This document shows, in pieces, positions 3,197 to 48,877 of a stretch of DNA of 55,560 nucleotides. Position 1 is the first letter of the stretch; each line of letters opens with the position of its first letter. This DNA is from Octopus bimaculoides (lineage: Eukaryota), in NCBI RefSeq assembly GCF_001194135.2, contig NC_068988.1:82965941-83021500 (forward strand). Reading direction: 5' to 3'. The notes under the pieces are model-generated. The model ran no database searches. It was not told the DNA's origin and saw only the letters and a list, made by a program, of their open reading frames with translations. The translations under genes were made by a program, and so were the position numbers.

Positions 3197-3490
3197 TTAC
3201 ATATGAGTGTCACTAAATGGAGGTTGAGGATATAAGGCGTTATTTTCAGTGTCGCTATCACTAAACATTGTCAAACTCCTGTCTCCTATAGAACTGCTTG
3301 GTGTTAGATCATAATGAGGACGGTAGTTTGGAGATAACAGTTCATGACTAATAGGACTTGATAAGGTTGACGTAGTTGTCTGTTTATGAATACAAGTGGT
3401 AGAGACACGAGATGAACGAGTCACTGACACATTCCGGAAACGCAAAGTGCTTGGGAAACAGTTTAATTTCATTTGGATGGTATGACGAAC
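3197..3490 (-). CDS. GPCR terminal coding exon, helix 8 and Ser/Thr-rich C-tail (97 aa plus stop)
   Basis: atatttgcag|GTT CGT CAT ACC ... CAT ATG TAA; continues NSE|V as in class B receptors; matches ORF 3197..3496. Confidence 0.88.
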   Translation of the reverse strand, partial: VRHTIQMKLNCFPSTLRFRNVSVTRSSRVSTTCIHKQTTTSTLSSPISHELLSPNYRPHYDLTPSSSIGDRSLTMFSDSDTENNALYPQPPFSDTHM

Positions 3491-4286
3491 CTGCAAATAT
3501 AATCATGGTGTGGAATAAATATAAAAGTTTAAAGGCAATGTTATACATAATGAAGACAAAGCATCAACTGTTTGTTTTATCAATAGATGGTCCAGTTTTA
3601 ACATGGAATTGGACCTGGGTTAGAGACTTCATTTGCTAGAAGTACACCTATTTTATCATAGTCATTAATAAAGGTATTACATTCTTCCTTAACTATTCTG
3701 TGTTGAAATCTAGACATAGGGTATGATTTATTTTTCATCAATTCAAAGTCAATGAAATAAGTACCAATAACACTGTGTAACATAATTTTTGTCCTTGGGT
3801 AGCAACTGTTATTTCCTATTTTCTTACCCCTAGAAAGTATGAAAAATGGCTATTTCCTTCAAACTTTGCTTTTGTTACACTTAGTCAAATCTCAAAGAAT
3901 CCCTCTCAACACTGGTTATGATGCTTCCCCGCTACTCCTGCTAATGATCAGAGATGCACATGATGTCAGCCACTAAGGGACATGCTTATGTGGTTAAGGG
4001 CAAACAACTGACAAGCAATTCTGTGGTATTGAGCAGAATACTTGCTATAACAATATTTCTGCTTCAGCAATTCAGTGCTGAATCTGTCTGGAATGTAATG
4101 GGAAACAGATCAGCTGCAAAACATTGATGTCCAGGTCACAAAAGCAAAGTTTGAAGGGAATAGTAGTCATTTCCTTTGATTTCTAGATAGAAGCAAATAG
4201 GAAATAACACTTTCTGACCAAAGACAAATAATAAAAACAATTGTTACACAGTGTGATATATTATTGGATCAATAGGTGACCTATCC

Positions 4287-4475
4287 TAGGGGTTCCCAAC
4301 CATTGGGCCAGGGATCACTTTGTAGTGGGTCACACAGAAACTAAATTTTAAAATTTTATTTCTATTTTATTGACTATTGTTGTTTTGTAATGCACTTGAT
4401 CTCCTGGTCCATGAAAAAAAAAAACTGCTTTGCACAAAACTGGTCCATAATGCAAAAAATGGTTAGGGGCCACTA
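4287..4475. mobile_element. hAT-type MITE
   Basis: Imperfect TIRs taggggttcccaacc / ggttaggggccacta; flanking 8-mers acctatcc / acctacca (6 of 8) resemble a decayed TSD. Confidence 0.65.
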
Positions 4476-9933: not shown

Positions 9934-9975
9934 CTCACTGTTTAAAAAGCAGTAGAAAACTGCCACGAAAAGACC
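9934..9975 (-). CDS. GPCR exon, end of TM7 (42 nt, phase 0 to 0)
   Basis: cctttttcccag|GGT CTT TTC GTG GCA GTT TTC TAC TGC TTT TTA AAC AGT GAG|gtatgt; encodes GLFVAVFYCFLNSE. Confidence 0.96.
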
Positions 9976-12246: not shown

Positions 12247-12382
12247 CTGAAATGATTGCAGGATGGTATCTGTATAGATCAATATGACTGAAGATGTTGA
12301 ACTTGCACTTGGTTGAAGAATAAACATTACATAAGTTATGCCCAACAAAGGTAGAAGCACCAAAGCACCCTTGACAGCTTTT
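12247..12382 (-). CDS. GPCR exon, TM6-ECL3-TM7 (136 nt, phase 2 to 0)
   Basis: aatttcag|A AAA GCT GTC AAG ... TCA TTT CAG|gtttgt; encodes KAVKGALVLLPLLGITYVMFILQPSASSTSSVILIYTDTILQSFQ; lies inside ORF 12214..12477. Confidence 0.96.
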
Positions 12383-13792
12383 CTGAAATTAAAGAAAATA
12401 CACATAACATTATCTGAATAAAGTAAATAAAACTCTACATCATGTATTGAGTTTTTTCTTCCATTCATTATAACCAATATACTTTATGCCCCTACTGGCT
12501 TTCAGCTAGTTAACCATTACAAATGAGCTGAGGATACACCATCAAATAATGGAGAAGATATGTAATTATTGAATCACTGAAGAACATTGCCATACAAAAC
12601 TTAGCAAGTGAATAGAGTAAAGTGAAAACATGTCTTGAAGAAGAATGAAATGGAAGGTATTTCTCTTCAACAAAAGTATGACCAATGTACCTGTATGTGA
12701 ATACCATTTCAACCCCCACCCCACAAATCCCAGAAAATCAAAAGAAGTGGAAAGTTTGAAAAAGAGTTATTCGAGCTTATCAAAACATTAAGATTCAATG
12801 GCAATGCTAATACTTTTCAAAATATGTTGAGGAGTATTTACTGCCAACTACAAACTCTAACAATACATTATTCATTATTCAGGCATATATATAAAACCAA
12901 GATCTTGTATGAGTTTGACAGAAATACGCAGTAAATTATTATTTGACAATATAACGAATACATATGAAAAACTTAGCGCAAATACATACAACATAAGTAA
13001 TAATGAAGTAAAAGACTTAGTCATGCATTTGAACATAAAAGAACATGAAAAATGCTCCCAGCCCATGTAAACTGTACTTAACATTAAAAGATCATAAAAA
13101 TAGTTTTATTGTAAACATTAAATGTCAGCTGAGCAGTCTGAGCTAGCAAAAGCATATTAGGTTCTCTAAATACAAAAATTAAGTGAACCTAGCACAATAG
13201 AATTGTAGTAGCAATGTTATTAGGCAGATTAATCCTATCTAAGACAACCCAATTGTAGAATTTTATCTGTTTGATAGTGTAGAGTACCACCCATCTTTTT
13301 CTAGGAATTTTTTTCCTGTAAGCTCTAGAATTAAAAAAAAATATATGCCACCATAACAGATACTAACATTATTATGATAATGAATGTAAGAAAATCGTAA
13401 TAATTTTTTAGTAATTCCTTGTTTTTGGTAACACAAAAATAAACTTTCAATGTATTTATGGGCAGCCATCATAGAGCTGATAGAGACAGATCTCATCTCC
13501 TATACACGCTCCATGTACTGATGAACAGAACAGAAGCTACCTATATAGAACTCTATGCTCTGCATTCAAATCCTTCCAGTGTCCATGAAATAAAATATCT
13601 GTTAAATGCTGGGGTGCAACTCTTATTCCGACCAATTGTTGTGTCTTAAACATTCTACCGGGTCAAAAGTGGGAGTGTTGAGAGATTGTTATGTTTGTTA
13701 GCAACTAATATGGCCACTAATAAACATTAAGTAAGTCTATGGCATGGTACATACTGACACCGAATTATATTCATCTGCAAGTGATGGTTATG

Positions 13793-13794
<2 letters not shown>

Positions 13795-13866
<72 letters not shown>
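13795..13866. repeat. (TA)n microsatellite
   Basis: Direct reading. Confidence 0.98.
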
Positions 13867-13871
<5 letters not shown>

Positions 13872-14029
13872 ATTTATAGATCTATACCAACATTTGGTAA
13901 AAATATTGTATCTGTTATCAACGTAGCAAAATTCTCACATGTGAGTTTTTGTATGTATATCAATTTAAATAAGAGCTAAAAGATGATCTATTGTAAAAAC
14001 TTTATTATGACCTATGATCATATATATAT

Positions 14030-14140
14030 ATAGTCTGCGATGGACTGGCGTCTCGTCCAGCTGGAGGCGGGGGACACATACACCATAGAAACCGGGAAAC
14101 CGGGCCCATGAGCCTGGCTAGGCTTTAAAAGGGCACATAA
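14030..14140 (+). mobile_element. 3' fragment of the SINE family at 16713
   Basis: gatggactggcgtctcgtccagctgg...gaaaccgggaaaccgggcccatgagcctggctaggctttaaaaggg, near-identical to 16864-16955. Confidence 0.8.
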
Positions 14141-14299
14141 ATAATAAAAAATAAATATATATAGTAGTAACAGAAAAAGAGGAATTTTGATTATCCCCAT
14201 CTGGTGAGTTGTAATATATATAAGAAATTAAAAAGGGAAAATACACACACTTTATCTACTTTTAATATAATTTTTAAATATATTGACCGGTTTTGCTTT

Positions 14300-16395
14300 C
14301 ACTGTTCATGATATTATGGTTTACTTATTTGAATATGTATTTTCTTAAGAAGAAATTTTTGTCCATGTTGTGTGTAATGATATTTACGAGTGAATGGCTT
14401 CACAAGTAGAAAAATAAGGGGAGGTTATTAGTTATCGTTATTATTGTTGTTGTGGGCAAGGGAGATAACTGTTCAGCTTTCGGTAAGAAGAGGGGAATAT
14501 ATATGTGTACACAAAAAAAAAGGTTTCGAAAAACATGTTTAGTGAGGGGATTTATGTACAGTGATGTAATCATGAACTGAAATATGTTAAAAGATAAAAG
14601 TTGGTTATGCATGCATATTAAGATGTGTTCTGTATTTTTCAATGAAAAAAGTTTCTTTATTTAAACATTCTTGTGGGGAGATTGTGTCTTTGCACTGGTA
14701 GAAGGGGAAGACTGAAATTTGGTTTGATGTTATCTGCACATTTTTCTATATGTTCACTAAAAGGAATTTTCCTGTATTGCGGGAAACAGATTTTCTCTTT
14801 ATGTAGAGTGGTTCTCCTTCTCAAGGTCATACTCGTCTGTCCAATATAGTTGTGTCCGCAACCCGAGCAGGTTATTACATAAATTAGGTTCTCAGAGGCA
14901 CAAGTGAAACTAGTTTTAATTGTGAACCTCTGTCCTTGTTTGAAAAGGAAGTCTGAGCCTTCAAGTAAGTTGGGGCGGATTCCACAGTCTGAGTGTCCAC
15001 ATTTTTTAATTGTTGGTTTCGTGGTTGTTTTATAGAGCTTTGAATTTGTTAGTAGTCTCTTTAGCGATTTGTGTTGCTTTTTGAATTAGATGAGTTTGTG
15101 CGTTTTCAGGATGTCATTCATTTTTGGATCTCTCTAGTTAGTAAAGGAAGATTTTGCACAATAGTGTTGAATGCCTCACTGTTTCTGGGGTTGTGTGTTG
15201 ATATAAATAGTAGTGTTTTGAGATGAGGTGTGGTGTTATGTGCTCTTGTTCTTAGTGTTTTTATGTCTAATGTTTTGGCATGTTTAAGTCCCTTGTCTAT
15301 AAGTGAGGGTGGATATTGTCTTTTAGTAAGCGTTGTTTTGAGGTCTTGAAGACGAAGGTCCCGAGCTGTTCTATCAGACACTATTGTGTAAATCCTTTTT
15401 CGACAAATTGAAAGAGATATTTTTTTTGATGTGTTTCAGGTGGCATGAGCTAAAGTGGAGATATTCTTTAGAATCAGTTGGTTTAAAAAAGATGTCAGTT
15501 ATGATTTGATTGTTGACTTTTTTTATCATGATGTCTAAAAATGGGAGCTGTTCTTTGTTATATTCCATTGTGAATTGAATGTTACTATTCATATCATTTA
15601 GTGTTGATTTGAAGTCCAAAAGTTTGTCGATGTTCTCCTTCCAAATGATAAAACAGTCATCCGGGTATCTTTTCCAATTTTCTCTTATGTAAAGGTAAAA
15701 TGGGTAACCATATTTCTGAAGTGATACTTCATATAAGGTGATTTCAAAATAACCCATTATTAGGTTCACAAGAACAGGGCTGCTTTTGTTCCCATCGCAA
15801 TTCTGCATTTCTGACGATAGTATGTGTCATCAAATAGAAAATAATTGTTCTGAAGTATAAATCTTAAAGATTCAATAACAAAGATCTGATTTATGTGTTC
15901 TGTGAGTACTTCAGAGTACTTTTCCAACCAGAATTTAATTGCTTTTATTCCATAGTCATGTAGGATGTTGGTGTAAAGATTGATAAGGGTAACCAATATT
16001 GCCTCTTCATTAATTGTTTTTGGTAGGTGTTCTAGCATGTCTAAATCGTCTCTAATGAAACTTTTGATGTATTTCAGCAAGGGTTTCAGTAGGATGTCTA
16101 GAAAATTGCTTAGGCGGTGGGTTTCACAGGCTGGGCCAGCTACAATGGGTCTTAAAGTTAAGTCTTCTGGTGTTTGGATATTTATGTATTTGCCTGGTGA
16201 TTTTTTTGCAGGCTTCATTGATTATCTTGCTCTTGTGTATTTTAGGAAGGCCATAAAAAAGACTGGGTTTACATTTGAAGTTTGTGATGTAGTCTGTTTC
16301 TTTTTCTGTCAGGCCTTTTCCATATAGAAGAATTAAGGATGCAAGATTTTTCATTGTTTTTTGTTGTTTATAGTTTATAACTTTTTCGTAGAATA
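14300..16395 (-). mobile_element. Penelope-like element B, 5'-truncated pseudogene (RT plus Cys-flanked GIY-YIG)
   Basis: Frameshifted ORFs: FYGLPKIHK, LRPIVAG, LYTNI, AMGTKAA, WKRYPDDCFIIW, LPFLDIMI, YLHFSSCH. Around 14720-15000 it reads NLIYVITCSGCGHNYIGQTSMTLRRR. Confidence 0.93.
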
Positions 16396-16396
16396 T

Positions 16397-16607
16397 ATTG
16401 CCAGTACCGCCTGACTGGCCTTCGTGTGGGTGGCACGTAAAAGCACCCACTACACTCTCAGAGTGGTTGGCGTTAGGAAGGGCATCCAGCTGTAGAAACT
16501 CTGCCAAATCAGATTGGAGCCTGGTGTAGCCATCTGGTTTCACCAGTCCTCAGTCAAATCGTCCAACCCATGCGAGCATGGAAAGCGGACGTTAAACGAT
16601 GATGATG

Positions 16608-16608
<1 letters not shown>
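16397..16608 (+). mobile_element. RTE-LINE 3' tail repeat ending in (GAT)n
   Basis: ggttggcgttaggaagggcatccagctgtagaaac...aacccatgc.agcatggaaagcggacgttaaacgatgatgat; abuts the truncated 5' end of Penelope B. Confidence 0.85.
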
Positions 16609-16641
<33 letters not shown>

Positions 16642-16658
16642 ATACATGTATATATATG

Positions 16659-16711
<53 letters not shown>

Positions 16712-16712
16712 G

Positions 16713-16960
16713 GAGGCACGTGGCTTAGTGGTTAGAGTGTCACCACCATGATTGTAAGATTGTGATTTCAATTCCTGGACCGGGCTACGCGTTGTGTTCT
16801 TGAGCAAAACACTTCATTTCATGTTGCTCCAGTCCACTCAGCTGGCAAAAATAAGTAACCCTGTGATGGACTGGTGTCCTGTCCAGCTGGGGAACACATA
16901 TGCCATTGAAACCGGGAAACAGGGCCCATGAGCTTGGCTAGGCTTTAAAAGGGTGCATTT
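16713..16960 (+). mobile_element. tRNA-derived SINE, near full length
   Basis: A-box TGGCTTAGTGG, B-box-like gatttcaattcc, central ttgagcaaaacacttcatttc domain; sits in (TG)/(TA) microsatellites. Confidence 0.8.
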
Positions 16961-16968
16961 ATTTTTTT

Positions 16969-17057
<89 letters not shown>

Positions 17058-17299
17058 TGTTTACATCATAAGAATTTTGAAATTTCAAGAGACTGTGAAA
17101 TACTTCATTTTTGATAAATTATTTATATTATTTATCTATTTATTTATATAAAGCTATTGTTTTCAGCTTTAACTTGGATTCAACTACTTAAAACAAATTA
17201 TATGTATATATATGCACATACACATACATACATATATGTACATATAAACATACATATATAATATATACACATATACATGAATACATACACACATATATA

Positions 17300-17830
17300 C
17301 ATATAGATGGTGACTGTCTACTCCTTATGCAGAGTCTGACCACCTCCTGTATGTACACCTTAGAACCATCATGGTATCTGATGTGACTTTTGAAACCAAT
17401 GTTTTGAAAAGACACCCACATACATTGCAAATCTGATTTGGACCACCAAGAGCTGCAGTTAAGTTCTGATCTTTGTGGATCTTAAAGTGTCTTTTGAGAC
17501 CTCTATTAGATTTGCAGACCTTTTGGCATACATTGCATTGAAGGGTGTGCACAGACATATAAGCAAAATAGTTGGTGGAGGTTCGTTTTCTATGGGTTCA
17601 CAAATGAGGTTTGAGCCCAGCAAAAGAAAGGCATCGTCTGTCACAAACTGTACACACAAAAAGGTCATTGTGATTCACCTTCTCGATCATAACATTCTTC
17701 TTTAAATTTCTCTTGAGTCTTGCATGCATTATCCTGGCCTCTTCAAACACTTTCACTCCACTCCACATTTTTGTTTGCCATCCAGCTTGATCCAAAGCAA
17801 GGGTTTCTATGTCCTCTGGATCCATACAGA
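17300..17830 (-). mobile_element. RTE-clade LINE C-terminal fragment with C2H2-like fingers
   Basis: ETLALDQAGWQTKMWSGVKVFEEARI...FVCTVCDRRCLSFAGLKPH and CNVCQKVCKSNRGLKRHFKIH (ORFs 17598..18143 and 17325..17558). Confidence 0.8.
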
Positions 17831-17904
17831 TACATGCATACATACACACACATATATAATACATACACACGCATGTATACATATAATATATACATATTGT
17901 AAGA

Positions 17905-18316
17905 TTGAGAAGACCCGGCAAGCCAAGTAAGATCGTTGCCAGTGCCCCTGGACTGGTTCTTGTGCGGGTGGCACATGAGATGCACCATTTTGAGCGTGGC
18001 CGTTGCCAGTACCGCCTGACTGGCTCCTGTAGGATTTTCGAGCGAGATCGTTGCCAGTGCCCCTGGACTGGCTTGTGCGGGTGGCACATAAAAGACACCA
18101 TTTCGAGCGTGGCCGTTTTCGTGCGGGTGACACGTAAAAGCACCCACTACACTCTCTGAGTGGTTGGCGTTAGGAAGGGCATCCAGCTGTAGAAACTCTG
18201 CCAAATCAGACTGGAGCCTGGTGTTGCCATCCGGTTTCACCAGTCCTCAGTCAAATCGTCCAACCCATGCTAGCATGGAAAGCGGACGTTAAACGATGAT
18301 GATGATGATGATGATA
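17905..18316 (+). mobile_element. RTE-LINE 3' UTR/tail, long variant with internal gccagt-containing subrepeats
   Basis: Starts gagaagacccggcaagccaagtaag, has repeated ttgccagt(g/a)cc units, and ends in (GAT)n. Confidence 0.85.
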
Positions 18317-18689
18317 TTTCCTTTATGGCAAGACATCAACACATCTTCTATTTAGTAGCCTTGGAGGCTTTTAACTTTGTAATATAGCATTTGTTGTTTA
18401 TATTTTAGTATACACATCCAAACACACGCAGTTATGCTATAATGTATTACAAAGTATATTCACCAAGATTATAGCCAATACTGTATGTAATGTTAGATGT
18501 AAACACCTTATCTTTGTACACAAAATCCTTGTGGGAAGAAAAAAAAGGAATCAACTGAACTAATTCCTATCCTTCTTTTAGATTTTATCAGCAACTGAGT
18601 ACTTGTTGTAACTTTCCACAGAGACACTGTATATAAAAGCAAAATTATTGTTCAGAGGAAAATACTACTATGTTGTAACCAAATATGAC

Positions 18690-19140
18690 TTCATCATCAT
18701 TATCATTTAACTTCCATTTTTCCATGCTGGCATTGGTTAGGTGCTTTATCTGGAGCTGTTAAACTGGAGAGCTGTACCAGGCTCCAGTCTGCTTTGGTTT
18801 GATTTCTACAGCTGGATGCCCTTCCTAATGCCATCCAACTCTACAGAGTGTACTGGGTGTCAATTATGTGTCACCAGCACAGGAACCTTTTATGTGTCAC
18901 CAGTATGGGTGCCTTTTATGTGTCTTTTACAAGTCAATAGCACTGACCATAACCATGATTTCACTTATCTTGACATGTCTTCTCAAGCACAGCAAATCGC
19001 CAGAAGTCTCAGTTGTTTGTCTTCGGCTCCATGAGGCTCAACAACTGAAGATCATGTTTCACCACCTCATCGCATATCTTTTTGGGTCTACCTCTTCCAC
19101 AGATTCCCTCCACAATTAGAGATCAGCACATCTTTTCACA
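18690..19140 (-). mobile_element. RTE-LINE 3' end (ORF end plus tail)
   Basis: Minus strand RGRPKKIxDEVVKHDLQLL-like text followed by the same tail and a (CAT)n run on the plus strand. Confidence 0.8.
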
Positions 19141-19704
19141 GATGTCCATAACAGAAATACCATTGTTTTAGTTTAAAGGAGTGAGAGCCACAAAGTATAA
19201 ACTTTATGGTTTTTCTGAGGGTGAAACAGACAAATGGACACATTGGTATGAATCCAAACAATCTGACACAGTCACAAACCTGTTGTTCTTTTAAAGGTGA
19301 TTTGAAGATGATTTCACTGTTATTTATAACATATCAATTGACAAAATACAGACATCTTTGTTGGATTGTCTAACAGTTGAAAAGAATATTACTTGCTTTG
19401 TCTTGAAAGGAAATTAACCCTTTTCAATATTCCTGCTGTAATAAAATGATTCTATAAAACACAACTGATAAAACAGTAGTGTTTACTGCTGTCTATTGAA
19501 AGAATGAATGTCACTTCTGAAGTAATGTGTCAACAACACAAATAACAGCTTTCAGAATGCTTGGAAAACTGCAGAGTAGAATCTCTTCAACTGTATATAA
19601 TCTTCACTCTAAACTATGAAGAAAGTCACAGCTTGGGCTATTAACACAGCGGACTAACATTGTTAAAATATATTTTCTGCTTCATATATAAGCAGGCACA
19701 GCTA

Positions 19705-20045
<341 letters not shown>

Positions 20046-20169
20046 GTCACTCCCCACTCTCTCTGGGATTTAGAAAACAAGTGTTGCAGGTTATTTTCCA
20101 GTGAGACAATAATCCAAGCAGCCTATAATGCAAAGGTGGCTACAGATAATTAGATACAGTATCTCAAAA

Positions 20170-21980
<1,811 letters not shown>

Positions 21981-22264
21981 TGACCTTGTACATGTTGCAT
22001 GGGTGTCTTTTGGGGTGTCCTTTGTCATTTTACTATACTTTTTACAAAATTTGCTGTTGCTATTGTTGTTTAACCCCAGGTAAACCCTGATCAAGCAAAC
22101 CTATGATCAAAAGAGTTCCAACTAGAAATCTTGTGTTATTTATATAGGCATATAGGACTGCATTATGAGGATGTGATTTGAGGGAGATTTGGTTGCTATT
22201 TCTAGCAAGTAGGGTAACTATGTAGATGTTTCCTCACTTTTGTTTCAGAGCTCTGTAACTCGAA

Positions 22265-22295
<31 letters not shown>

Positions 22296-22744
22296 GGGAA
22301 TGTGCATGTATATGTGTATGAGTGTATGTATGCATGTAAGTTCTTGTGTATGACGATGAAAATATGTGTGTTTGTTTTGATATTTGTAATTTGTGAGTAT
22401 GTATGCTTATACACACAAATTACTCTGTGGTTAAGAAACTCACTTCACAAGTCCTAGGTTTGATCCCACAGCATAGCATCTTGAGTAAGTGTTGCTTACC
22501 AAAGCCTCAGCTCAACCCAGGTTATATGATGGAAACTGGGTGAACAGAAACCGGATGGAAGCCTATCAAATGATCTGTACTTGTGATTAAAAAATCCAGC
22601 TGTGTTGCATGTCTGTGGAATACTAAGCCACATCTACATTAGTATAATGAACAAGTTGTTCAGTTGAATGTACTACAAAAATACTCACTGTTGAAACTGA
22701 TGGTCAAAAACATAATCTCTCAAAAAACCATGTAATATATATAT

Positions 22745-24637: not shown

Positions 24638-24673
<36 letters not shown>

Positions 24674-27770: not shown

Positions 27771-28009
27771 CAATCTTCTGTTCATAACACACACACATAC
27801 ACTCACATATTCACAATCTCTTGTACATAACACACACACAATTCACACAGATACATACACAATTTGCATGCATGCGCACACACACTTGCACACATATAAT
27901 TCAAGTAGAAGGATGAACTTGACAAACAGCTGGTAGGAAGAGGTAAAGAAATAATAATTTTACATAGCTGTGTATGTGTTTGTGTATATATATATATATA
28001 TATATATGG

Positions 28010-29597: not shown

Positions 29598-30292
29598 CAG
29601 GGTGCAATGGGTAAATTGTTGCCATTCGTTGCCATTCTATGCTTTCAATTTCGCACATGCACATTGTTTATTTTGGATTTTGTTGACTACACAGTATAGT
29701 AGGGTTAGATGGCCTTTCTGTGAGAAAAACAGCACCATGAAGCAATTCACTCTGCCAGAAATTTGGAAACAACATGCTGTACTGCTTGGCATTCATGCTG
29801 GAAACTCCAGTATAAACATTTCAGAGTGTTTGAGTGTCAATCTGAGGACAGTGCAATCGGAGGACATGTACTGATAGTGATAAAAATCAAACATCCAGTC
29901 AACCTCATGATGCTTCAAGTGATCACTAGTGATGGTGACGTTATGCCTCCATTCATTTTCCCACACAGCCTCACACTCAACACGGAGGCCTACATCAAGT
30001 GCCTGGAGGAGGTAGTGCTGCCCTGGGTCGAGAGGGTGGTTGCTGGAAGACCCTGTATCTGGCAACAGGACTCTGCACCATACCACATGAGCAGGAGAAC
30101 CCAGTCGTAGCTGTCTGACAATTTCTACGACCACAGCACCCCTAACATCTGGCCACCTAACTCCCCAGACTTGATTATGTTGTGTTGTGTTGGGTACAGT
30201 TGAGTGAGAAAACAACAAAATTCCTTGTAACACCAAAGATGAACTGAAGGCAAGGATTATGGCAGCATTCACAGTTTATTCACTGCACGGTG
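29598..30292 (+). mobile_element. Internally deleted maT element, copy 2
   Basis: TA|cagggtgcaatgggtaaattg left end, acagtttattcactgcac right end; WQQDSAPYH and WPPNSPD motifs; colinear with copy 1. Confidence 0.9.
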
Positions 30293-30310
30293 TGTGTGTG
30301 TGTGTATATG

Positions 30311-30341
<31 letters not shown>

Positions 30342-30710
30342 TATCAATAATTAATATTATCAAGGGCAATGAGAAATATTAGAAATTTCTACTACCAGTG
30401 GCCTAGCGTGTAAAATTTAGTCAATAGACTATATATTATTCATATAAATACAGTGTACATTTAAACACATAAGAGGCATCCATTATATGGATTCCTTGCA
30501 TGCTAGAAAGAACAGTTAAATTCCATACCACTATTTAGGGATAAAACTTCGAAGGGAATGAAAAATAAAAACATTTACCATCTAACTCCTGGACCAATGG
30601 TTTCAGACTTATTTTAGCAAATAAAATAATTTGCTAAGTGAAGTCTTCTTAGAATGTACAATTAGAATGTATAAGCATGAGGCAGATACTGGATTGACTC
30701 GTGTATATAT

Positions 30711-30966
30711 NNNNNNNNNNNNNNNNNNNNNNNNNNNNNNNNNNNNNNNNNNNNNNNNNNNNNNNNNNNNNNNNNNNNNNNNNNNNNNNNNNNNNNNNNN
30801 NNNNNNNNNNNNNNNNNNNNNNNNNNNNNNNNNNNNNNNNNNNNNNNNNNNNNNNNNNNNNNNNNNNNNNNNNNNNNNNNNNNNNNNNNNNNNNNNNNNN
30901 NNNNNNNNNNNNNNNNNNNNNNNNNNNNNNNNNNNNNNNNNNNNNNNNNNNNNNNNNNNNNNNNNN
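30711..30966. other. Assembly gap
   Basis: Run of N. Confidence 1.
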
Positions 30967-31005
<39 letters not shown>

Positions 31006-31188
31006 TCATCATCATCATCATCATCATCAACATCATCGTTTAACATCCATTTTACCATGTTGGCATTGGGTTAGACAGTTTGACAGGAGCTGGCCAGTCA
31101 GAGAGCTGTCCCAGCTCCAATTGTCTGTATTGGCATGGTCTCTAGAGCTGGATGCCCTTCCAAATCCCATAAACACATACACACTCTG

Positions 31189-31230
<42 letters not shown>

Positions 31231-31399
31231 GCATACATGCATAGGCATAGCTGTGTGGTTGAGAAATTTGCTTTCCAAGTACATGGTTTCAAGTCCAGTC
31301 CCATTGTATAGCACTTCTTTACATAAGTGTCTTCTACTACAGCCTTGAACCGACCAAAGTCTTGTGAGTAAATTTGTTAGACAGAAACTGAAACTGATG

Positions 31400-32035
31400 C
31401 AGAAAAGGAATTTGGATGCAAATAAGCTACATGGATGTGACAACTAATGCAGACTTTGTAGAATTAACATTGAGTATGTCACCTACTTCGTAAGTAGCAG
31501 CCCCAAATAATGTCCTCATGGTATTACTTAACAGTGAAACAAGATGTTACGGCTGGAACACTAATGAAATCTATGGTATGGATAATCTTAGCAATACAAA
31601 TATTAGAAGCAACAGTGATGTGAATGGCACAGCAACACATTTTGTAAGACTACAAGTGGAACATCCATGTCAGAACTTCAGTAAAAAACAGACCAAACAT
31701 TATGATCTGGGAGAGAGAAAGGAAACTATGCACAATAGTTGAAATCAGTTGGCCAGTAGATTTCAGCATAATGTTAAAGGTTAGTAGAAAAGAAAACTTC
31801 TATGTTGAACAATTGAAAAATATGAAAATTTTCCATCCAAACCATGAATTTAGGTTTCCACCAAAAATTATTGGAGTATTTGGTCATGTGACTTATTGCC
31901 TCAGAACCAATTTTGAGAAGTTGGGATTCACAAAGCCAGAAAGAAAATGCCTAATTAGGAGATTAGAGCTATAAGCTATCAAAGGTAAGGTTGTAATATG
32001 TGAAAGATTCATGAAATTCAGTGTGTAATAAGATA
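31400..32035 (+). mobile_element. R4/Dong-like LINE 3' end (CCHC knuckle plus restriction-like endonuclease)
   Basis: CRLCRINIEYVTYFVSSSP, then IWERERKLCTIVEISWPVDFSI..K..K..Y....IIGVFGHV (ORF 31702..31974). Confidence 0.8.
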
Positions 32036-32987
32036 TACATATGCATTGTCATCAATGCTTAGCCTACACACACACACACACACGTGTGTACATGCATACA
32101 TACATGTATACATAAGTATGTGTATGTGTATATACATACATCCATACATACACACACACACGCACACATAATTCAAATAGAGGTTATAATAGCCTCATAA
32201 AGGGATGGTATCATCCAAGGAAATACTGGTTCAATACCTAATATTTTTTGGGGAGGAGATTAATATCCATAAAATAATAGGTTTATATATAAACCATGGT
32301 TTATAGTCACGTGGATGAATAATAATAAAATGGAAATATTGAAGTTAATAAGAGTTTATTATCGGCAAAAAAATCGATCCTTATCCCTTACAGCTGTTTC
32401 AATCAAGTTCAGTGAAATTAAATAAGTATTAAAATCATATTTCTGAGCTTAATTTCTTCAGAGGGAGGAAGAATATACCCTTAGATATTTTATGCATTAT
32501 TTGAATCATCACAGTAGACTGAATAATATTGTTTATGATTGGTAATGGTATATGTCTTGGTGAGGGGGTAACAGGTTTGTTATGGGTAAGATATAGTATG
32601 CAAATATAATTAGTGTAATGAAGAGTAAGTAAATAGAGATTGAAGATTAAATTACAATGTGAATAAAGTACATTATGAATGAGGTGAGGAATTGAATTAC
32701 ATTTGTAAGTTATATATAATATAAAAAAATTGAGATAAATATATCTATATATAAAAATACACACATACATGTAAAAATATATACATATATACATATACAC
32801 ACATACATATATATATATGTGTGTGTGTGTGTGTGTAGAATGTGAATATAGTTATCTATGCAACAGAAGCATACGTAGGTCATAGTTAAACCAAATATGC
32901 TATATAATTGACTCTAAAAAAATATGTAGATACATTAATCTCAATAGTCATTGTAATTGTCTTGTCTGTCTGTCTGAATGTATGTAT

Positions 32988-33023
<36 letters not shown>

Positions 33024-35219
33024 TTGTATGTGTGTGTAAGTACAAACATTGTTAAAGAGATGTGTAGAAGGGAGTATGGTATTTATTACATAAAGACATG
33101 GGTAACAACATATGTAATATACTGAATATGATATTAAATGCATCTTAATTTGATTGAAAGAAACAAACAAAATTGTTCCAATCAGTTATATTCTTTCTAA
33201 TTTTGGCCCAAGGTCAGTAGTTTTGAGTGGAGGGGCAAGTTGATTACACCAACTGAAAGAATGAGTCAAAATTGACCTCAGCAGAATTTGAACTTAAAAC
33301 ATAGAGATCCAGAAAAAATAACCACTAAGTATTTGTCTGACATGCTAATGATTCTGACAACTCACTGTCTTCAGACCTAAATATCATATTAGAGTATGAT
33401 AGTAAAATGTTATCATGTTTAAGTAATTATGACATCAGCAATACAGAAAAAAAAAAAGATATAAAGGGCTAAATGCTACCTATATACCTACATCATTTGT
33501 TGCTGCACTAAAGCTGTTCTTCAACTTTGTACCACTTGCAAGAAGAGAAGAAAGAACATTATTGATCAAAGTACAGATATTCCCTCTTACTCCATCTTTT
33601 CCCTAATTCTAGAATAAATAAGCTTATATATATATGCTGGAGACATTGGTCATTTGTTTTCATATAAATTTATGGAAGAATAACTGCTATGTGGGCGAAA
33701 TAATTCTTTACTTTCTCTTTCTCATTTCTCTTTGTCTATCAATCAATGACATAATTCATACATATGCAAGATCTAATGGTTATTATGTATGGGCTTGAGT
33801 TGAGTTTGGTGGTGTGGAAATAAAGTAATTCTTTGCTCTAATGTCTTCAGTGAAGTGCAGTCCATTGATAAGAAGTAGTATTGCACACGAACAATAGACC
33901 TACTCAATAAGAATTGCAGAATGTAGTATGTTTCAAGGGGAGGCAGTTATTATAATTTCATTACCAAGATATCTTGGATTGAATTATTGTAAGATAATGA
34001 TTAAGAAATAAAGGTATCAGAATTATTGTTGTTTACACCTGGTCAACTTGATACAACAGACCTATGATTAAAGATGTTCCAGCCATGACCATCACATACT
34101 GTCTTTCAGACTGTGTATTTAGAACCAATTATTCAATTTCTTAAAAGACATGATTTGATGGAAATTTAGTTGCTATTTCTTGCTGGTCAAGCAGCTACAT
34201 TGAGGCTCCCATATTGACTTGAAGATCTCAGAGGTACAAGGACAAAGAAAAATGACATTTTGAGATGTTCACTATTTCCTGAAGGGCAGAAATAAATTCT
34301 AGAAATATTTTAAGTAGAAATCAATGCCAGGTCATGCAGTTAGCTCAGCCACAAGTTCCTAGACAGTACATAAATATTTCTAATTTAGATACAAAATCAA
34401 CAATTTTGAAAGAAGGGGTTAGTTGATTATCTTGATCCCAATACTTGACAAGTACTTTATATTATTGACCACAGGTGCGTTAAAAATTCAAGTTGACCTC
34501 GGTAGGATTTGAACTCTGAACATAAAGAGCCAAAAGAAATACTGCCAGGTATTTCTTCCAAAGTTCTACCATTTCTGCCAGCTCAACACGTTAATGTATT
34601 AGCATATAATGCTGTATAAGGGTTTCTAATTTAAGCAGAAAGCCAGAGTTTTTAAAAGGTGGGGAGACAGTCGAGACCATCGACCCCAGTACTTATCTGA
34701 TACTTTATTTTATTGACTCTGAAAGATGAAAAGCAAAGTCGACCTTGGGAACATCTGAACTTAGAACATTAAAAAAAGCAGAAAAATGCTGCAAGGCATT
34801 TTCCTGTTATGCCAGCAATTCTGCCAGCTCACCACCTTGAAGTATAATGGAAGAATATTATGCAACTGATTTCTTGGTGTCTCTTTTAATCTTCCATGCA
34901 ACATATGCTTAAAAACAATGAATAATGGGGATTTAAAAAAAAATATATATCTTGTATCTATAAGTAAGTTGTTTCATAATCCATACAGAAAACGAAGCTG
35001 ACAAGTGTTAGGAAAGAAATTATTGGGAAGACTTCAAGCCATGATGCTCTTCTCTCTAGTGATAAAATATGGAAAATGAAGTGGCATGGTCATATAATGT
35101 GACACTATGACACTCCATGTCTAGTGATTTTGGTTGTGATAGACAAATTCTTTTCCTGGTAAAAGAGAAGACCATGTAGGAGAAAATGAGCAACATCAAG
35201 GACTGGAGAAAGAGAGAGA

Positions 35220-35530
35220 CATCATCATCATCATTGTTTAACGTCTGCTTTCCATGCTAGCATGGGTTGGATGATTTAACTGGGGACTGGCGAACCAGAT
35301 GGCTACACCAGACTCCAATCTGATCTGGCAGAGTTTCTACAGCTGGATGCCCTTCCTAACGCCAACCACTCTGAGAGTGTAGTGGGTGCTTTTTACATGC
35401 CACTGGCACGAGGGCCAGTCAGGCAGTACTGGCAACGGCCGTGCTCAAATGGTGTTTTTTATGTGCCACCTGCACAGGAGTCAGTCCAATGTTTCGTTCA
35501 CATGCCACTGGCACGAGTGCCAGTAAGGCG
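35220..35530 (-). mobile_element. RTE-LINE 3' tail repeat
   Basis: (CAT)n, ttccatgctagcatgggttgg, ctacagctggatgcccttcctaacgccaacc. Confidence 0.85.
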
Positions 35531-35804
35531 AATCTGGAAACGATGTAAATGGAAAATAAAAAAACTGATTGATGACAGGGAAAAATGTAGAAGGGAGGAT
35601 GTTGAGTCTTTTGTGATCTACCTATGATCTCCCTATGTTGTGAATTTCAGTTTGATAATATTTATGAGAGAATCAGTGAGTTTTGATGATTATGTTTTTG
35701 CCTAAAACCTTTCATATATTTGATCATCTCCAAATCAAAATCATACTTTTTGTTTGCTGAGAATTTTACAATATGTTGCCAATAATATAAATCCTGATAC
35801 TCAC

Positions 35805-35874
35805 AAACAGAACCAGAAATACAGGCACACAATGGATGTAGTCAAAATTGGACATAGGTACAGCTATCCAACAC
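35805..35874 (-). CDS. GPCR exon, ECL2-TM5 (70 nt, phase 2 to 0)
   Basis: ttattgtttcag|G TGT TGG ATA GCT ... CTG TTT|gtgagt; encodes CWIAVPMSNFDYIHCVPVFLVLF with the conserved ECL2 CW. Confidence 0.94.
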
Positions 35875-40480: not shown

Positions 40481-40541
40481 GAGTTATTTTCAAAGTGAGC
40501 TTTTAGAAGTGCCCAGACAAGAATTAATGGGAAAGGAATTC
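40481..40541 (-). CDS. GPCR exon, TM4-ECL2 (61 nt, phase 1 to 2)
   Basis: tctattatag|GA ATT CCT TTC CCA ... AAT AAC TC|gtaagt; encodes (G)IPFPLILVWALLKAHFENN(S). Confidence 0.95.
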
Positions 40542-46443: not shown

Positions 46444-46597
46444 CCCATCCTATTAGTTTGAAATGCCAAAGCTGGAGTTTTTCTGAAGAATATGTCCAAA
46501 CGACAATCATGTGCAAGTGAAGACCTTCAACAAACATCCAATAGAAGTTTGTACTCTGGAAGTAATTGAAAGCTGTCACCAAAGCTTTACATAACCA
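46444..46597 (-). CDS. GPCR exon, TM3-ICL2-start of TM4 (154 nt, phase 0 to 1)
   Basis: ctatctctag|TGG TTA TGT AAA ... GGA TGG G|gtaagt; encodes WLCKALVTAFNYFQSTNFYWMFVEGLHLHMIVVWTYSSEKLQLWHFKLIGW. Confidence 0.96.
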
Positions 46598-48750
46598 CTA
46601 GAGATAGAAGATAATGGGCATAAGATTAGTGTTGTTTAATAAATAAATTTTTATATGTACAAACAGTGCAGTATTAATTTAATTTAAAATTTCATATTCA
46701 ACTTTAAGAAAATACTCAGCCAAATATTTTTTATAACTTTTGTAAATTTTCCTTTTCTTAATCACTTGTTTATTTACCTAATACTTACACATTCAACTGT
46801 CCTTTCATGCCTTCTATACTCTCTCCCCTATCTTTTCATTCAATTATTCACTTGGGTGAATAAACCATTAACTGCTCAACCAGCAAATTGAATTCTGTTG
46901 ACCATAGAAGAATCAAAAGCTCTACATTGCAAACTAATAAAATCATTTTCATTATGCAATTCTTTAAGTGTTTATTGCAATTAATAAGTTATCTGGAACT
47001 GATTGTTCAGAGATAATTACATTTACCAGGAATAAATTGCCACCCTGTGTATAGAATGCAAACCCCACAATCTTCATCTGTTAACTTGTATTTATGGTGG
47101 CTTGGCCACTTGACAACCTTGATTTGGTTAGGACTTTTGAAATAGCTTTTACAAATAAAATGGAATTTCCTGGGGTGAGGGATAGGTCCAGGATTTAGGG
47201 TGAATTTTAAAGTACTCCATATTGCAAAACACTTGTAAATAGTTTAAAAAGAATTTTCCTTTTAAATCCATATTTTTCAAATGTCTCAGTCCTGCCCTTC
47301 GGAGTAGCTACTACGATTAAAAAGATTATTTTTTCTTTTCTTTTTGCTATTTCTCGATTTGTTTTTTAGAATAATGCACGTTCTAAATAATTTAGAATTC
47401 ACATTTTTGAGAAAAACAAATTCTTAAACACTTTTCCTCCTTCATTGTACCTTTCATGATTAAAATTTCTTTTCTTGTCATTATTTATAATTTTATAGTA
47501 TTCCAAATTGTGAAACACTTCTGATAGACATGTAATTTGCATTGAAAATTTTTATTTTATTTTCAAAAATTTGTGTTTTTCAAATTTCTTACTCTGCTCG
47601 CCCCCATACCCTTTATCCATAATTGCCATTCTATTCTTGAAAACAAAATTCTTTAAATTTCAGTTTTTGAACATCTTTTGTCCCACCACCAAAACCAACT
47701 TTATTTTTACACTTTTGCCAATCTTTAAAACCTTTTTCCTTTTTCTATTCAGGTGGCTGCAAAAAATAAGTTTAATGAACCATATTTACCAGATGTTTGT
47801 TAATTTTTTTCACCCCCAAAATACTTTAATCACAAAATGTATGATAAAAGGTAATTGAGAAATTGTTTTTTATAAAAATATGTATTACAATTGTTTCAGA
47901 ATGTGGAAATGAAAAATAATGAAGATGAAAAAATCATGTGTGTGTGTGTGTAAGTGCATGTGTGCATATGTGTGGAGAGGGCTGAAACATTTGAAAATAT
48001 AGATTTTGCAAAAAAGGTTTTAGTTTATACAATAAAGTGATCTGCAAGTGTTTTGCAATGTGGGATACTATAAAATATTGAAAAATACCAACCCTCCACA
48101 TTAAAAAAAACAAAAAAGAGAAATTTGTGACAGCTATTCCGAAAGCCCACTTTTGATTTGTTTATAAATAGAGACTATAAAACATTCTCAATACCCAATG
48201 AGCTTGAATATCTCCAAACCATTAATAGCCTATCAACATTCATTGACATTATTAGACTGTTTGTCATGTAGCACACTGTACTATTCCAAAAACTTGTTTA
48301 GTCTGGTTATCACAAATGGTTGTGCCATGCTGGTCATTCATTCACTTTCATTGTTCTTGTTGGGATGTGACACCACCCTAACTTCTGCTATGACATGAAG
48401 GCAAACATGTAGGAATAAGCTTATTGTTTGTCTTGTACATCAGTTTCCAGTTTTACTAACCAACGTTGCGAAATGAAATCTGAGATGTAATGATATTTGA
48501 TACAAAATATCTGAGAGCCTTGTCCAAAGTTAACAGTTTTCATTGGGTTTCATAGCACAACTTGTCTCAAATATGTTTTATTGAAGATCTAAAGTATTTT
48601 TTTCTATTAATATCCCAGCTTACATACAGAGAGAAAGAGAGAGAGAGAAGATTGGAAGACACATCAAATAATATTATTCTGCACAAATGAACTGGCCAGA
48701 AAATCAGTTAAGTCAAATTCAATGAGTGTCTATTTGTTTTCTCTACTCAC

Positions 48751-48877
48751 CTCAAGATGGGGTTTGTGAACGGCCACATGTTCTATACTATGTCGCATGG
48801 CCAGCCAAATGATGTTACGAAGGATAAAACTCATAATTAAGTGGCAGTGAATCTTATTTCGAAGACATCGCAGATTT
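48751..48877 (-). CDS. GPCR exon, ICL1-TM2-ECL1 (127 nt, phase 2 to 0)
   Basis: ttttttctttag|A AAT CTG CGA TGT CTT CGA AAT AAG ATT CAC ... CTT GAG|gtgagt; encodes NLRCLRNKIHCHLIMSFILRNIIWLAMRHSIEHVAVHKPHLE. Confidence 0.95.

What the first reader, a model, noticed from the sequence alone, without database searches (positions are those of the whole stretch)
3197..48877. A CRF/DH44-type neuropeptide receptor hidden as eight exons across 46 kb
Seen: eight GT-AG exons splice with matching phases into an uninterrupted 322-aa TM2-to-C-terminus; most are absent from the ORF track or appear only in fragments. Known: RKAVK..LVLLPLLGITY, GxPFPxIxxWA and FYCFLNSEV point to the CRF/DH44 branch of class B1, and molluscan egg-laying hormone belongs to the CRF/DH44 peptide family. 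Inference: this is a candidate receptor for an ELH/CRF-like peptide in an octopus. Its several non-canonical residues suggest a divergent paralogue.
Basis: partly seen in the sequence, partly recalled or inferred. Interest (0 to 1): 0.72.

Follow-up and report, generated by a model that had tools for sequence, protein, structure and literature searches.

The report
Known octopus CRF/DH44-type receptor gene
The eight exons are real and splice exactly as described, but they are the 3' part of an Octopus bimaculoides CRF/DH44-type peptide-receptor gene that RefSeq already annotates, so this is a correct rediscovery and not a hidden gene.

Summary
Eight AG...GT exons on the minus strand (48877 to 3197) join in frame into a 322-aa product running from TM2 to the stop codon. 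All three N gaps lie inside introns 4 and 5, at least 843 bp from any exon, and no residue is missing at those junctions.

The product is 100% identical to residues 138-459 of O. bimaculoides XP_014778785.1 ("corticotropin-releasing factor receptor 2") and ends all six O. bimaculoides protein models. The gene spans about 145 kb, and its TM1 and ECD exons lie beyond position 55560.

The CRF/DH44 assignment holds:
- Solved structures: CRF1R scores 1e-71, PTH1R 6e-44 and CALCR 9e-36.
- In an NJ tree, the split from PTHR, calcitonin, PDFR-like and cluster-B receptors has 94% bootstrap.

Published O. maya qPCR primers match exons 4 and 6 exactly, which supports the spliced E4-E5-E6 chain.

Two parts of the interpretation fail:
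- The gene is one of a cephalopod-specific pair, but it is not more divergent than its paralogue.
- No ELH/DH44 precursor has been found in any cephalopod (PMC6425005), so the ligand is unknown.

Novelty: already known. Interest is low.

The parts
48751..48877 (-). Coding exon 1 of 8 in the window (127 nt; residues 138-179 of XP_014778785.1). It encodes TM2 and ECL1. Its first base completes the Arg137 codon.
   Evidence: AG/GT boundaries and frame; tblastn to P0001; helix map from the AlphaFold model.
46444..46597 (-). Exon 2 (154 nt; residues 180-231). It encodes TM3 with the disulfide Cys182 and the EGLHLH motif, then ICL2 and the start of TM4. It ends in phase 1 inside GWG.
40481..40541 (-). 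Exon 3 (61 nt; residues 231-251). It encodes TM4 (GIPFPLILVWA) and ends in phase 2.
35805..35874 (-). Exon 4 (70 nt; residues 251/252-274). It encodes the ECL2 cysteine (CW) and the N-terminal half of TM5. It contains the O. maya qPCR sense-primer site at 35835-35814.
26452..26537 (-). Exon 5 (86 nt; residues 275-303). It encodes the C-terminal half of TM5 and ICL3, and ends in phase 2 (AG|A = Arg303).
12247..12382 (-). Exon 6 (136 nt; residues 303/304-348). It encodes TM6 (RKAVKGALVLLPLLGITY, the PxxG hinge), ECL3 and the N-terminal half of TM7. It contains the O. maya qPCR antisense-primer site at 12358-12377.
9934..9975 (-). Exon 7 (42 nt; residues 349-362). It encodes the C-terminal half of TM7 (GLFVAVFYCFLNSE).
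3197..3490 (-). Exon 8 (294 nt including the TAA stop; residues 363-459). It encodes helix 8 and a disordered Ser/Thr-rich tail that ends in a conserved ...SSSIGDRSLT[ML]FSDSD...DTHM motif.
26538..35804 (-). Intron 4 (nominally 9267 bp). It contains the N gap 30711-30966, which abuts a SINE-like repeat copy at 30967-31164.
12383..26451 (-). Intron 5 (nominally 14069 bp). It contains the N gaps 23113-23651 and 25055-25609, both flanked by interspersed-repeat copies, and a LINE reverse-transcriptase fragment on the + strand at 24544-25054.
48878..55560 (-). Part of the intron upstream of the TM2 exon (more than 6.7 kb within the window). It holds no match to residues 1-137 (ECD, TM1).
   Evidence: tblastn with P0001, P0002 and P0003.

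Best explanation
Window positions 3197-48877 (minus strand) hold the last eight coding exons, TM2 through the C-terminus, of an Octopus bimaculoides gene that is already annotated. The gene encodes a class B1 (secretin-family) peptide GPCR of the CRH-receptor / DH44-receptor orthology group (RefSeq XP_014778785.1 and five further O. bimaculoides protein models).

Shown here:
- The exon chain, its frame and its exact identity to the RefSeq product.
- Placement in the CRHR/DH44R clade.
- A cephalopod-lineage duplication that gave paralogue A (this gene) and paralogue B (XP_014771477.1).
- Strong purifying selection and expression as a spliced mRNA in related cephalopods.

Inferred from established class B1 pharmacology:
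- The extracellular HRM domain, which is encoded upstream of the window, captures the C-terminal part of an amidated helical peptide of about 40 residues.
- The peptide's N-terminus inserts into the TM bundle.
- TM6 kinks at the conserved P-L-L-G hinge, and the receptor activates Gs and raises cAMP.

The natural ligand is unknown. By homology it should be a DH44/CRH-type peptide, but none has been identified in cephalopods.
For: - Exon model: 8 GT-AG exons giving 322 aa with no internal stop.
- Exact identity to residues 138-459 of XP_014778785.1 and to the C-terminal 322 aa of all six O. bimaculoides protein models.
- Gene span of 144.7 kb in GCA_001194135.2.
- Pfam 7tm_2, E = 1.8e-55.
- PDB sequence search: CRF1R 1.4e-71 and CRF2R 4.8e-70, then PTH1R 5.9e-44, VIPR1 8.9e-39 and CALCR 8.5e-36.
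- Of the top 120 database hits, every one that carries a receptor name is called a CRF receptor.
- NJ tree of 123 taxa and 262 TM-domain columns: CRHR/DH44R versus the outgroup block 94%, cephalopod A+B 100%, type A 98%.
- Hallmark residues retained: H2.50, E3.50, the TM3-ECL2 cysteines, W4.50, N5.50, PxxG, Q7.49, Y7.57 and N7.61.
- Only 4-5 of 322 residues differ from O. vulgaris and O. sinensis.
- A type-A mRNA on intronless contigs in five RNA-seq runs is colinear across all 7 junctions, with dN/dS about 0.1.
- O. maya qPCR primers match exons 4 and 6 at 100%, giving a 142-nt amplicon that is possible only from spliced cDNA.
- AlphaFold model: ECD plus 7TM plus helix 8. It superposes best on CRF1R and CRF2R (TMt 0.81-0.84, rmsd 3.4-3.8 A).
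Against: - No RNA-seq from O. bimaculoides itself could be aligned here, so junction support comes from RefSeq models and from other cephalopod species.
- Ligand, G-protein coupling and physiology are inferred, not measured.
- T6.42 of the class B polar lock is Ala, and Y3.53 is His in this paralogue. Basal activity or coupling could therefore differ from vertebrate CRF receptors.
- The literature reports no DH44/ELH precursor in cephalopods (PMC6425005).
- The tree is NJ only. Deep nodes inside the family are weak (lophotrochozoan clade 23%, type B 64%).
- By Foldseek E-value alone, CALCR and PTH1R chains rank above the CRF receptors, because the CRF chains lack the ECD.
Confidence: 0.93

Rival explanations
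1. One reading: a previously unannotated, unusually divergent CRF/DH44-type paralogue that serves as the receptor for an octopus egg-laying-hormone-like peptide.
For: The family assignment is right. A second paralogue exists. The O. maya orthologue is expressed more highly in the female white body and heart during the reproductive phase (PMC6522055). CRF-like immunoreactivity has been reported in octopus neurons (PMC5736919).
Against: - The gene is already annotated.
- It is not more divergent than paralogue B: MRCA-to-tip 0.25 vs 0.26; unique changes are fewer or not significantly different in every comparison; and it departs from conserved columns at 26 sites against 28 for B.
- ELH is a gastropod-restricted clade of DH44, and no ELH/DH44 precursor was found in O. 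bimaculoides, Sepia or Euprymna (PMC6425005).
- My own peptide-profile search found no cephalopod hit, but it failed its positive control.
Confidence: 0.1
2. An orphan by ligand loss. The ancestral DH44/ELH gene is truly gone in cephalopods, and the two retained receptors are activated by a recruited, non-homologous peptide or signal constitutively.
For: - Repeated failures to find the precursor in cephalopod genomes and transcriptomes (PMC6425005).
- Both receptor paralogues are intact and constrained.
- All six cephalopod sequences carry Ala at T6.42. From my own knowledge of PTH1R and VPAC1 mutants, substitutions at this position raise basal activity in other class B receptors.
Against: - Short, fast-evolving peptide precursors are easily missed.
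- CRF-like immunoreactivity exists in octopus, although antibody cross-reaction is weak evidence.
- Arthropod DH44R-type receptors carry Leu at 6.42 in 18 of 18 sequences. As I recall, some of these have been deorphanised as ligand-activated receptors, so losing Thr does not imply ligand independence.
Confidence: 0.2
3. A decaying or non-functional gene copy (pseudogene) that merely keeps an open frame.
For: Very long introns full of repeats. Two unusual residues at conserved switch positions.
Against: - The frame is intact across 8 exons with canonical splice sites.
- Only 4-5 of 322 amino-acid differences among three Octopus species.
- dN/dS about 0.1 against a distant type-A orthologue.
- Transcripts in several cephalopods and qPCR in O. 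maya.
- All structural hallmarks are retained.
Confidence: 0.02
4. A member of a different class B1 branch (calcitonin/DH31, PDF, PTH or cluster-B 'secretin-like' receptors) that carries convergent CRF-like motifs.
For: Foldseek E-values rank CALCR and PTH1R chains first. NCBI automatic names within class B are unreliable: a PDF-receptor-like cluster is also labelled 'CRF receptor 1-like'.
Against: - Sequence scores to CRF1R and CRF2R are about 90 bits higher than to any other solved class B receptor.
- The split from the outgroup block has 94% bootstrap.
- The best TM-score, rmsd and identity are to CRF1R and CRF2R. The Foldseek E-value ranking is explained by the missing ECD in the CRF chains.
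Confidence: 0.01

Closest known systems
Octopus bimaculoides XP_014778785.1 / XP_014778784, -86, -87, XP_052826176, -77 ('corticotropin-releasing factor receptor 1/2', RefSeq; gene on a 97.8-Mb chromosome of GCA_001194135.2)
   Same: It is the same gene. The window's spliced product equals residues 138-459 exactly, and all six protein models share this C-terminal 322 aa.
   Different: Nothing differs in the window part. The models differ only in ECD exons that lie outside the window.
Orthologues in O. sinensis (XP_029639676.1) and O. vulgaris (CAI9726726.1), and the O. maya 'CRHR2' transcript assayed by qPCR (PMC6522055)
   Same: 98.4-98.8% identity over the 322 aa. The O. maya primers match exons 4 and 6 perfectly.
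   Different: 4-5 substitutions, for example F234L in TM4 and T332I in ECL3.
Cephalopod paralogue B (O. bimaculoides XP_014771477.1, O. vulgaris CAI9735959.1, Argonauta hians)
   Same: Same family and architecture (HRM + 7tm_2). It shares most cephalopod-specific residues, including T6.42A, and forms a 100%-supported clade with paralogue A.
   Different: About 54% identity and a different chromosome. B keeps Tyr3.53 where A has His. The C-tails differ, although both end in T-x-hydrophobic.
Human CRF1R / CRF2R (for example PDB 6p9x, 6pb0, 6pb1)
   Same: The best solved-structure match by sequence (1e-71) and by superposition (TMt 0.84, rmsd 3.8 A, 44-46% identity). It shares RKAVK.TLVLLPLLGITY, G.PFP.I..WA and FYCFLNSEVR almost verbatim.
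   Different: About 45% identity. The octopus protein has Ala for T6.42 and His for Y3.53, and a longer, unrelated Ser/Thr-rich tail. Its ligand is unknown.
Arthropod DH44 receptors (NCBI 'diuretic hormone receptor', for example the Diorhabda and Hetaerina clusters P0184 and P0155; Drosophila DH44-R1/R2 belong here to my knowledge)
   Same: Same orthology group in the tree, separated from the PTHR, calcitonin, PDFR-like and cluster-B receptors.
   Different: A separate, 91%-supported arthropod clade. It has Leu at 6.42 and Tyr or Phe at 3.55.

Membership tests
Class B1 (secretin-family) GPCR | A 7tm_2 transmembrane domain scoring above Pfam's gathering threshold | tested here: met
   PF00002 scores E = 1.8e-55 at 188 bits (cut-off 20.6) and covers profile positions 31-250 of 250, that is TM2 to TM7.
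Class B1 (secretin-family) GPCR | An N-terminal hormone-receptor (HRM) ectodomain with six conserved cysteines | tested here: met
   It is not encoded in the window. It is present in the full-length product that ends in the window's 322 aa: PF02793 is recorded for P0001 and P0127, and cysteines lie at positions 11, 28, 37, 51, 68 and 83.
Class B1 (secretin-family) GPCR | TM3-ECL2 disulfide cysteines and the P6.47-x-x-G6.50 hinge | tested here: met
   Cys182, Cys252, Pro314 and Gly317 are present. These positions are invariant or nearly so in all 123 aligned receptors.
Class B1 (secretin-family) GPCR | The HETX polar lock (H2.50, E3.50, T6.42, Y7.57). This is a conserved motif, not strictly defining. 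| tested here: inconclusive
   H147, E203 and Y356 are present, but position 309 is Ala. The same Ala occurs in all six cephalopod sequences. Arthropod DH44R-type sequences have Leu in 18 of 18, and 4 of 24 deuterostome CRHRs have Ala, so the position is not diagnostic.
CRH-receptor / DH44-receptor orthology group | Closest similarity to CRF1R and CRF2R among characterised class B receptors | tested here: met
   CRF1R scores 245 bits and CRF2R 240 bits. The next are PTH1R at 154, VIPR1 at 137 and CALCR at 127 bits. Of the top 120 hits, every one with a receptor name is called a CRF receptor.
CRH-receptor / DH44-receptor orthology group | Phylogenetic placement inside the CRHR/DH44R clade and outside the PTHR, calcitonin/DH31R, PDFR-like and cluster-B clades | tested here: met
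   NJ tree with 300 bootstraps: the split between the family and the 55-sequence outgroup block has 94% support. Clades were labelled from source names. Limitations: NJ only, and automatic names.
CRH-receptor / DH44-receptor orthology group | Activation by a CRH/DH44-type peptide with a cAMP response | not testable with these tools
   This needs heterologous expression and peptide assays.
   The literature reports none in O. bimaculoides, Sepia or Euprymna (PMC6425005). My profile search of 5.8e9 proteins found no cephalopod hit, but it also missed known bivalve precursors, so it is uninformative.

The most novel reading that the evidence does not exclude
Cephalopods keep two selectively constrained CRH/DH44-type receptors that arose by a lineage-specific duplication, although the cognate DH44/ELH precursor is truly absent. 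The receptors would then have been re-wired to a non-homologous ligand or to ligand-independent signalling, helped by the cephalopod-wide T6.42A change. [quoted passage not shown]
Probability: 0.15. Interest if true: 0.6.

Novelty: already known. Interest (0 to 1): 0.15.

Why it matters
As a discovery it matters little. The gene, its exon chain and its family name are already in RefSeq for three Octopus species. According to PMC5736919 the 2015 genome paper lists a CRF receptor among its class B GPCRs, and the O. maya orthologue has been quantified by qPCR.

The check does have value as validation. A reader working from raw sequence alone reconstructed a 2%-coding, 46-kb gene fragment exactly.

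Two side points may interest specialists:
- Octopuses have two CRHR/DH44R-type genes from a cephalopod-lineage duplication, whereas a survey of molluscan class B receptors reported a single copy (PMC7200681).
- Both copies are conserved even though no DH44/ELH-type ligand has been found in cephalopods. This makes the pair a concrete target for deorphanisation.

Tried and rejected
- TM1 and ECD exons in 48878-55560: tblastn with three full-length cephalopod proteins found nothing, so they lie outside the window.
- Orthologous genomic DNA for an exon-versus-intron conservation and dN/dS test: the loci exist, but their ranges (145 kb and 121 kb) are too long to be served. I used a more distant mRNA instead. 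dS was saturated, NG86 failed, and only LWL85 gave about 0.10.
- Cephalopod DH44/ELH ligand search: a profile of 15 mature peptide units taken from the PMC6425005 supplement was run against 5.8e9 proteins. It returned 3 hits, none from a cephalopod, and it failed to recover the known bivalve precursors. It is uninformative.
- Species of the unnamed Logan transcripts P0002, P0005 and P0006: the SRA run numbers matched only unrelated papers. The duplication therefore cannot be dated relative to the octopod-decapodiform split.
- Rfam and tRNA scans of the window found nothing.
- Pfam on the long intronic ORF chains found only a LINE RT fragment and sub-threshold zinc-finger hits. The ORF chain at 16549-14660, the ORF at 8347-7817 and the ORF at 29763-30110 had no hit.
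- Foldseek E-value ranking does not resolve the subfamily, because the CRF receptor chains lack the ECD.
- 'Pseudogene' and 'other class B branch' were considered and rejected (see the rival explanations).
Full report
**Observation**

I read the splice-site context of each stop-free segment and used a remembered CRF1R fragment only as a lead to find the TM5 exon. This located eight exons:

| Exon | Coordinates |
|---|---|
| 1 | 48877-48751 |
| 2 | 46597-46444 |
| 3 | 40541-40481 |
| 4 | 35874-35805 |
| 5 | 26537-26452 |
| 6 | 12382-12247 |
| 7 | 9975-9934 |
| 8 | 3490-3197 |

Each exon follows a pyrimidine-rich tract ending in AG. Exons 1-7 are followed by GT, and exon 8 ends in TAA. Joined, they give 970 nt. 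After dropping the first base, which completes an upstream codon, the product is a 322-aa protein with no internal stop; the other two frames contain 23-24 stops. Coding sequence makes up 2.1% of the 45.7-kb span, and no ORF of 110 aa or more overlaps an exon. That explains why an ORF track misses the gene.

**Assembly gaps**

Gap 30711-30966 lies in intron 4, and gaps 23113-23651 and 25055-25609 lie in intron 5. They are 4174, 2801 and 843 bp from the nearest exon edge. Copies of a SINE-like interspersed repeat abut all three gaps, which is the usual reason for such assembly breaks. The protein is continuous across the E4/E5 and E5/E6 junctions in three comparisons: against human CRF1R, against an intronless cephalopod mRNA, and against the RefSeq protein built on the newer chromosome-level assembly. 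No coding exon is therefore hidden in a gap, and only the intron lengths are uncertain.

**Identity**

- Pfam 7tm_2 matches at E = 1.8e-55 and covers profile positions 31-250 of 250, that is TM2 onwards.
- In the large protein collection the best hit is O. sinensis 'corticotropin-releasing factor receptor 2 isoform X2' at 98% identity and 100% coverage.
- Its 90% cluster contains RefSeq models from O. bimaculoides, O. sinensis and O. vulgaris.
- The window's product is an exact substring, residues 138-459 (the C-terminus), of O. bimaculoides XP_014778785.1. All six O. bimaculoides protein models end with the same 322 aa and differ only in ECD exons.
- The window is therefore O. bimaculoides, and this exon chain is already annotated.
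- The gene spans 144.7 kb in GCA_001194135.2 and 121.5 kb in O. vulgaris.
- tblastn with three full-length cephalopod proteins finds nothing for residues 1-137 in the window.

**Family**

- Among solved structures, CRF1R (1.4e-71, 245 bits) and CRF2R (4.8e-70) are far ahead of PTH1R (5.9e-44), VIPR1 (8.9e-39), the secretin receptor, PAC1 and CALCR (8.5e-36).
- An exhaustive search of 1.84 billion cluster representatives gave 466 clusters at E <= 1e-30.
- I built an NJ tree of 123 sequences on 262 TM-domain columns and labelled its clades from source names. It shows a deuterostome CRHR group (crinoid, hemichordate, amphioxus, tunicate, vertebrates), an arthropod 'diuretic hormone receptor' (DH44-R-type) clade, and a lophotrochozoan group containing the cephalopods.
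- These are separated from a block of lamprey PTH1R-like, 'secretin receptor-like' (cluster B), CGRP/calcitonin-receptor-like and PDF-receptor-like sequences. That split has 94% bootstrap support and the arthropod clade has 91%.
- The refutation condition named in the finding, placement with calcitonin/DH31, PDF or PTH receptors, is not met.
- An AlphaFold model of the full-length orthologue (pLDDT 77, pTM 0.65) shows an ECD, seven TM helices, helix 8 and a disordered tail. All top PDB matches are class B1 receptors.
- Foldseek E-values favour CALCR and PTH1R chains, which include an ECD. The TM-only CRF1R and CRF2R chains give much the best superposition: TMt 0.81-0.84, rmsd 3.4-3.8 A and 44-46% identity, against about 0.65 and 9-14 A.

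**Is it functional and expressed?**

- Only 4 (O. vulgaris) or 5 (O. sinensis) of the 322 residues differ.
- A type-A orthologue (P0002, 69% identity over this 322-aa region) is encoded on intronless 1.5-1.9-kb contigs in five independent RNA-seq runs. It aligns to the window protein with no indel at any of the seven junctions. dN/dS is about 0.10 by LWL85, with dS saturated, so this is only a rough value.
- The qPCR primers published for O. maya 'corticotropin-releasing factor receptor 2' (PMC6522055) match the window perfectly at 35835-35814 in exon 4 and at 12358-12377 in exon 6. They are 23.5 kb apart in the genome but 142 nt apart in the spliced mRNA. The reported amplification supports the E4-E5-E6 chain, which spans exactly the two introns that carry the gaps. 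That paper reports higher expression in the female white body and heart.
- An O. vulgaris Crhr2 transcript (MF467256) is listed for the gastric ganglion. The same paper notes that a CRF receptor appears in the class B list of the 2015 O. bimaculoides genome paper (PMC5736919).

**The 'divergent paralogue' claim**

There are two loci per Octopus species on different chromosomes. The six cephalopod sequences form a clade with 100% bootstrap, split into type A (this gene plus P0002, 98%) and type B (64%). This indicates a duplication in the cephalopod lineage. A is not the more divergent copy:

- Bit scores to other molluscan CRFR-like proteins are about 340 for A and about 345 for B.
- Distances from the cephalopod ancestor are 0.25 and 0.26.
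- Tajima-type relative-rate tests with six outgroups never show A evolving faster; where there is a trend, B has more unique changes.
- At 121 columns that are at least 90% conserved in non-cephalopod CRFRs, A departs at 26 and B at 28.

At the class B switch positions the protein keeps R2.46, H2.50, C3.29, N3.43, E3.50, L3.54, W4.50, the ECL2 Cys, P5.42, N5.50, P6.47-x-x-G6.50, Q7.49, G7.50, Y7.57, N7.61 and E8.41 (the position numbering is my own assignment). There are two exceptions:

- Y3.53 is His. This is specific to type A, although His also occurs in 7 of 55 outgroup receptors.
- T6.42 is Ala. This is true of all six cephalopod sequences. Arthropod DH44R-type sequences have Leu there in 18 of 18.

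Neither change argues for loss of function.

**The ligand claim**

CRH, DH44 and ELH are accepted homologues, but gastropod ELH forms a lineage-specific clade. De Oliveira et al. found no ELH/DH44 precursor in any cephalopod data set: the O. bimaculoides proteome, Sepia CNS transcriptomes and the Euprymna genome. They proposed loss in the lineage (PMC6425005). I found no later paper reporting one. My own profile search, with peptide units taken from that paper's supplement, failed its positive control and is uninformative. CRF-like immunoreactivity in octopus neurons is only weak evidence for a ligand. 'Candidate receptor for an ELH/CRF-like peptide' is therefore an inference from homology with no identified ligand.

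**Mechanism**

This is inferred from established class B1 pharmacology and was not tested here. The ECD binds the C-terminal part of a helical peptide, and the peptide's N-terminus engages the TM core. TM6 kinks at the conserved PLLG hinge, and Gs and cAMP signalling follows. The conserved C-terminal T-x-hydrophobic ending (THM, THI, TGV or TKV in the cephalopod sequences) resembles the PDZ ligand of CRF1R; that comparison rests on my own knowledge.

**Surroundings**

The introns are repeat-rich. About 20% of the window matches elsewhere in the window, and none of those matches overlaps an exon. There is a LINE reverse-transcriptase fragment on the + strand at 24544-25054 (RVT_1, 9.9e-8), plus several degenerate ORF chains with no Pfam hit. 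There are no Rfam families or tRNAs. I saw no second gene.

**Verdict**

Novelty is 'already known'. A residual point of interest is that cephalopods keep two constrained CRH/DH44-type receptors, whereas PMC7200681 reported a single copy in molluscs, and no cognate peptide has been found.

Noticed in passing
window 24544-25054 (+), abutting the N gap at 25055: An ORF carrying a reverse-transcriptase fragment (Pfam RVT_1, 9.9e-8, with a YADD motif) plus a sub-threshold PHD-finger hit. It looks like a LINE-type retroelement remnant inside intron 5, truncated by the assembly gap.
   Followed up: partly
window, for example 49804-50093, 35220-35488, 22735-23027, 18039-18303, 16397-16628, 37340-37549, 30967-31164, 25685-25879: A SINE-like interspersed repeat of about 200-290 bp occurs in at least 10 copies (72-92% identity, both orientations). 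Copies sit next to all three N gaps, and none overlaps an exon. About 20% of the window matches itself elsewhere.
   Followed up: partly
window 29589-30271 and 10875-11547: A 685-bp dispersed repeat pair (83% identity) in introns 4 and 6. The copy at 29589-30271 holds ORFs on both strands (29763-30110 on +, 29793-30272 on -). The + strand ORF gave no Pfam hit. It is probably a DNA-transposon remnant.
   Followed up: partly
window 16549-14660 (-) and 8347-7817 (-): Chains of long, frame-shifted ORFs (about 690 aa in total in the first). By eye they resemble a retroelement polymerase followed by a GIY-YIG-like block (IYVITCSGCGHNYIGQTS; FYIGSMENYIKK), but neither had any Pfam hit at E <= 0.01.
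   Followed up: partly
window 17328-18146 (-): An ORF with two C2H2-like zinc-finger motifs. All Pfam hits are below the curated cut-offs. It is embedded among SINE copies and is likely a transposon-derived fragment.
   Followed up: partly
related proteins P0127 / P0130 (O. bimaculoides) and P0126 / P0003 (O. vulgaris): Each Octopus species has two CRHR/DH44R-type genes on different chromosomes, forming a 100%-supported cephalopod clade. A survey that included the O. bimaculoides genome states that molluscs have a single CRHR-like gene (PMC7200681).
   Followed up: yes
window 3197-3300 (-), the C-terminal end of exon 8: The otherwise disordered tail ends in a block conserved between type-A orthologues (YDLTPSSSIGDRSLT[ML]FSDSD...DTH[MI]). 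Both paralogues end in T-x-hydrophobic, which resembles a class I PDZ-binding motif like the -TAV of CRF1R (from my own knowledge; not tested).
   Followed up: no
window, for example 39800-40000, 19685-19868, 50938-51306, 10531-10700: Abundant microsatellites and low-complexity tracts, including (TG/CA)n, (TATG/CATA)n-like repeats and CTAT-rich repeats. They produce long spurious ORFs such as CVCVCV... and MYVCMYV....
   Followed up: no
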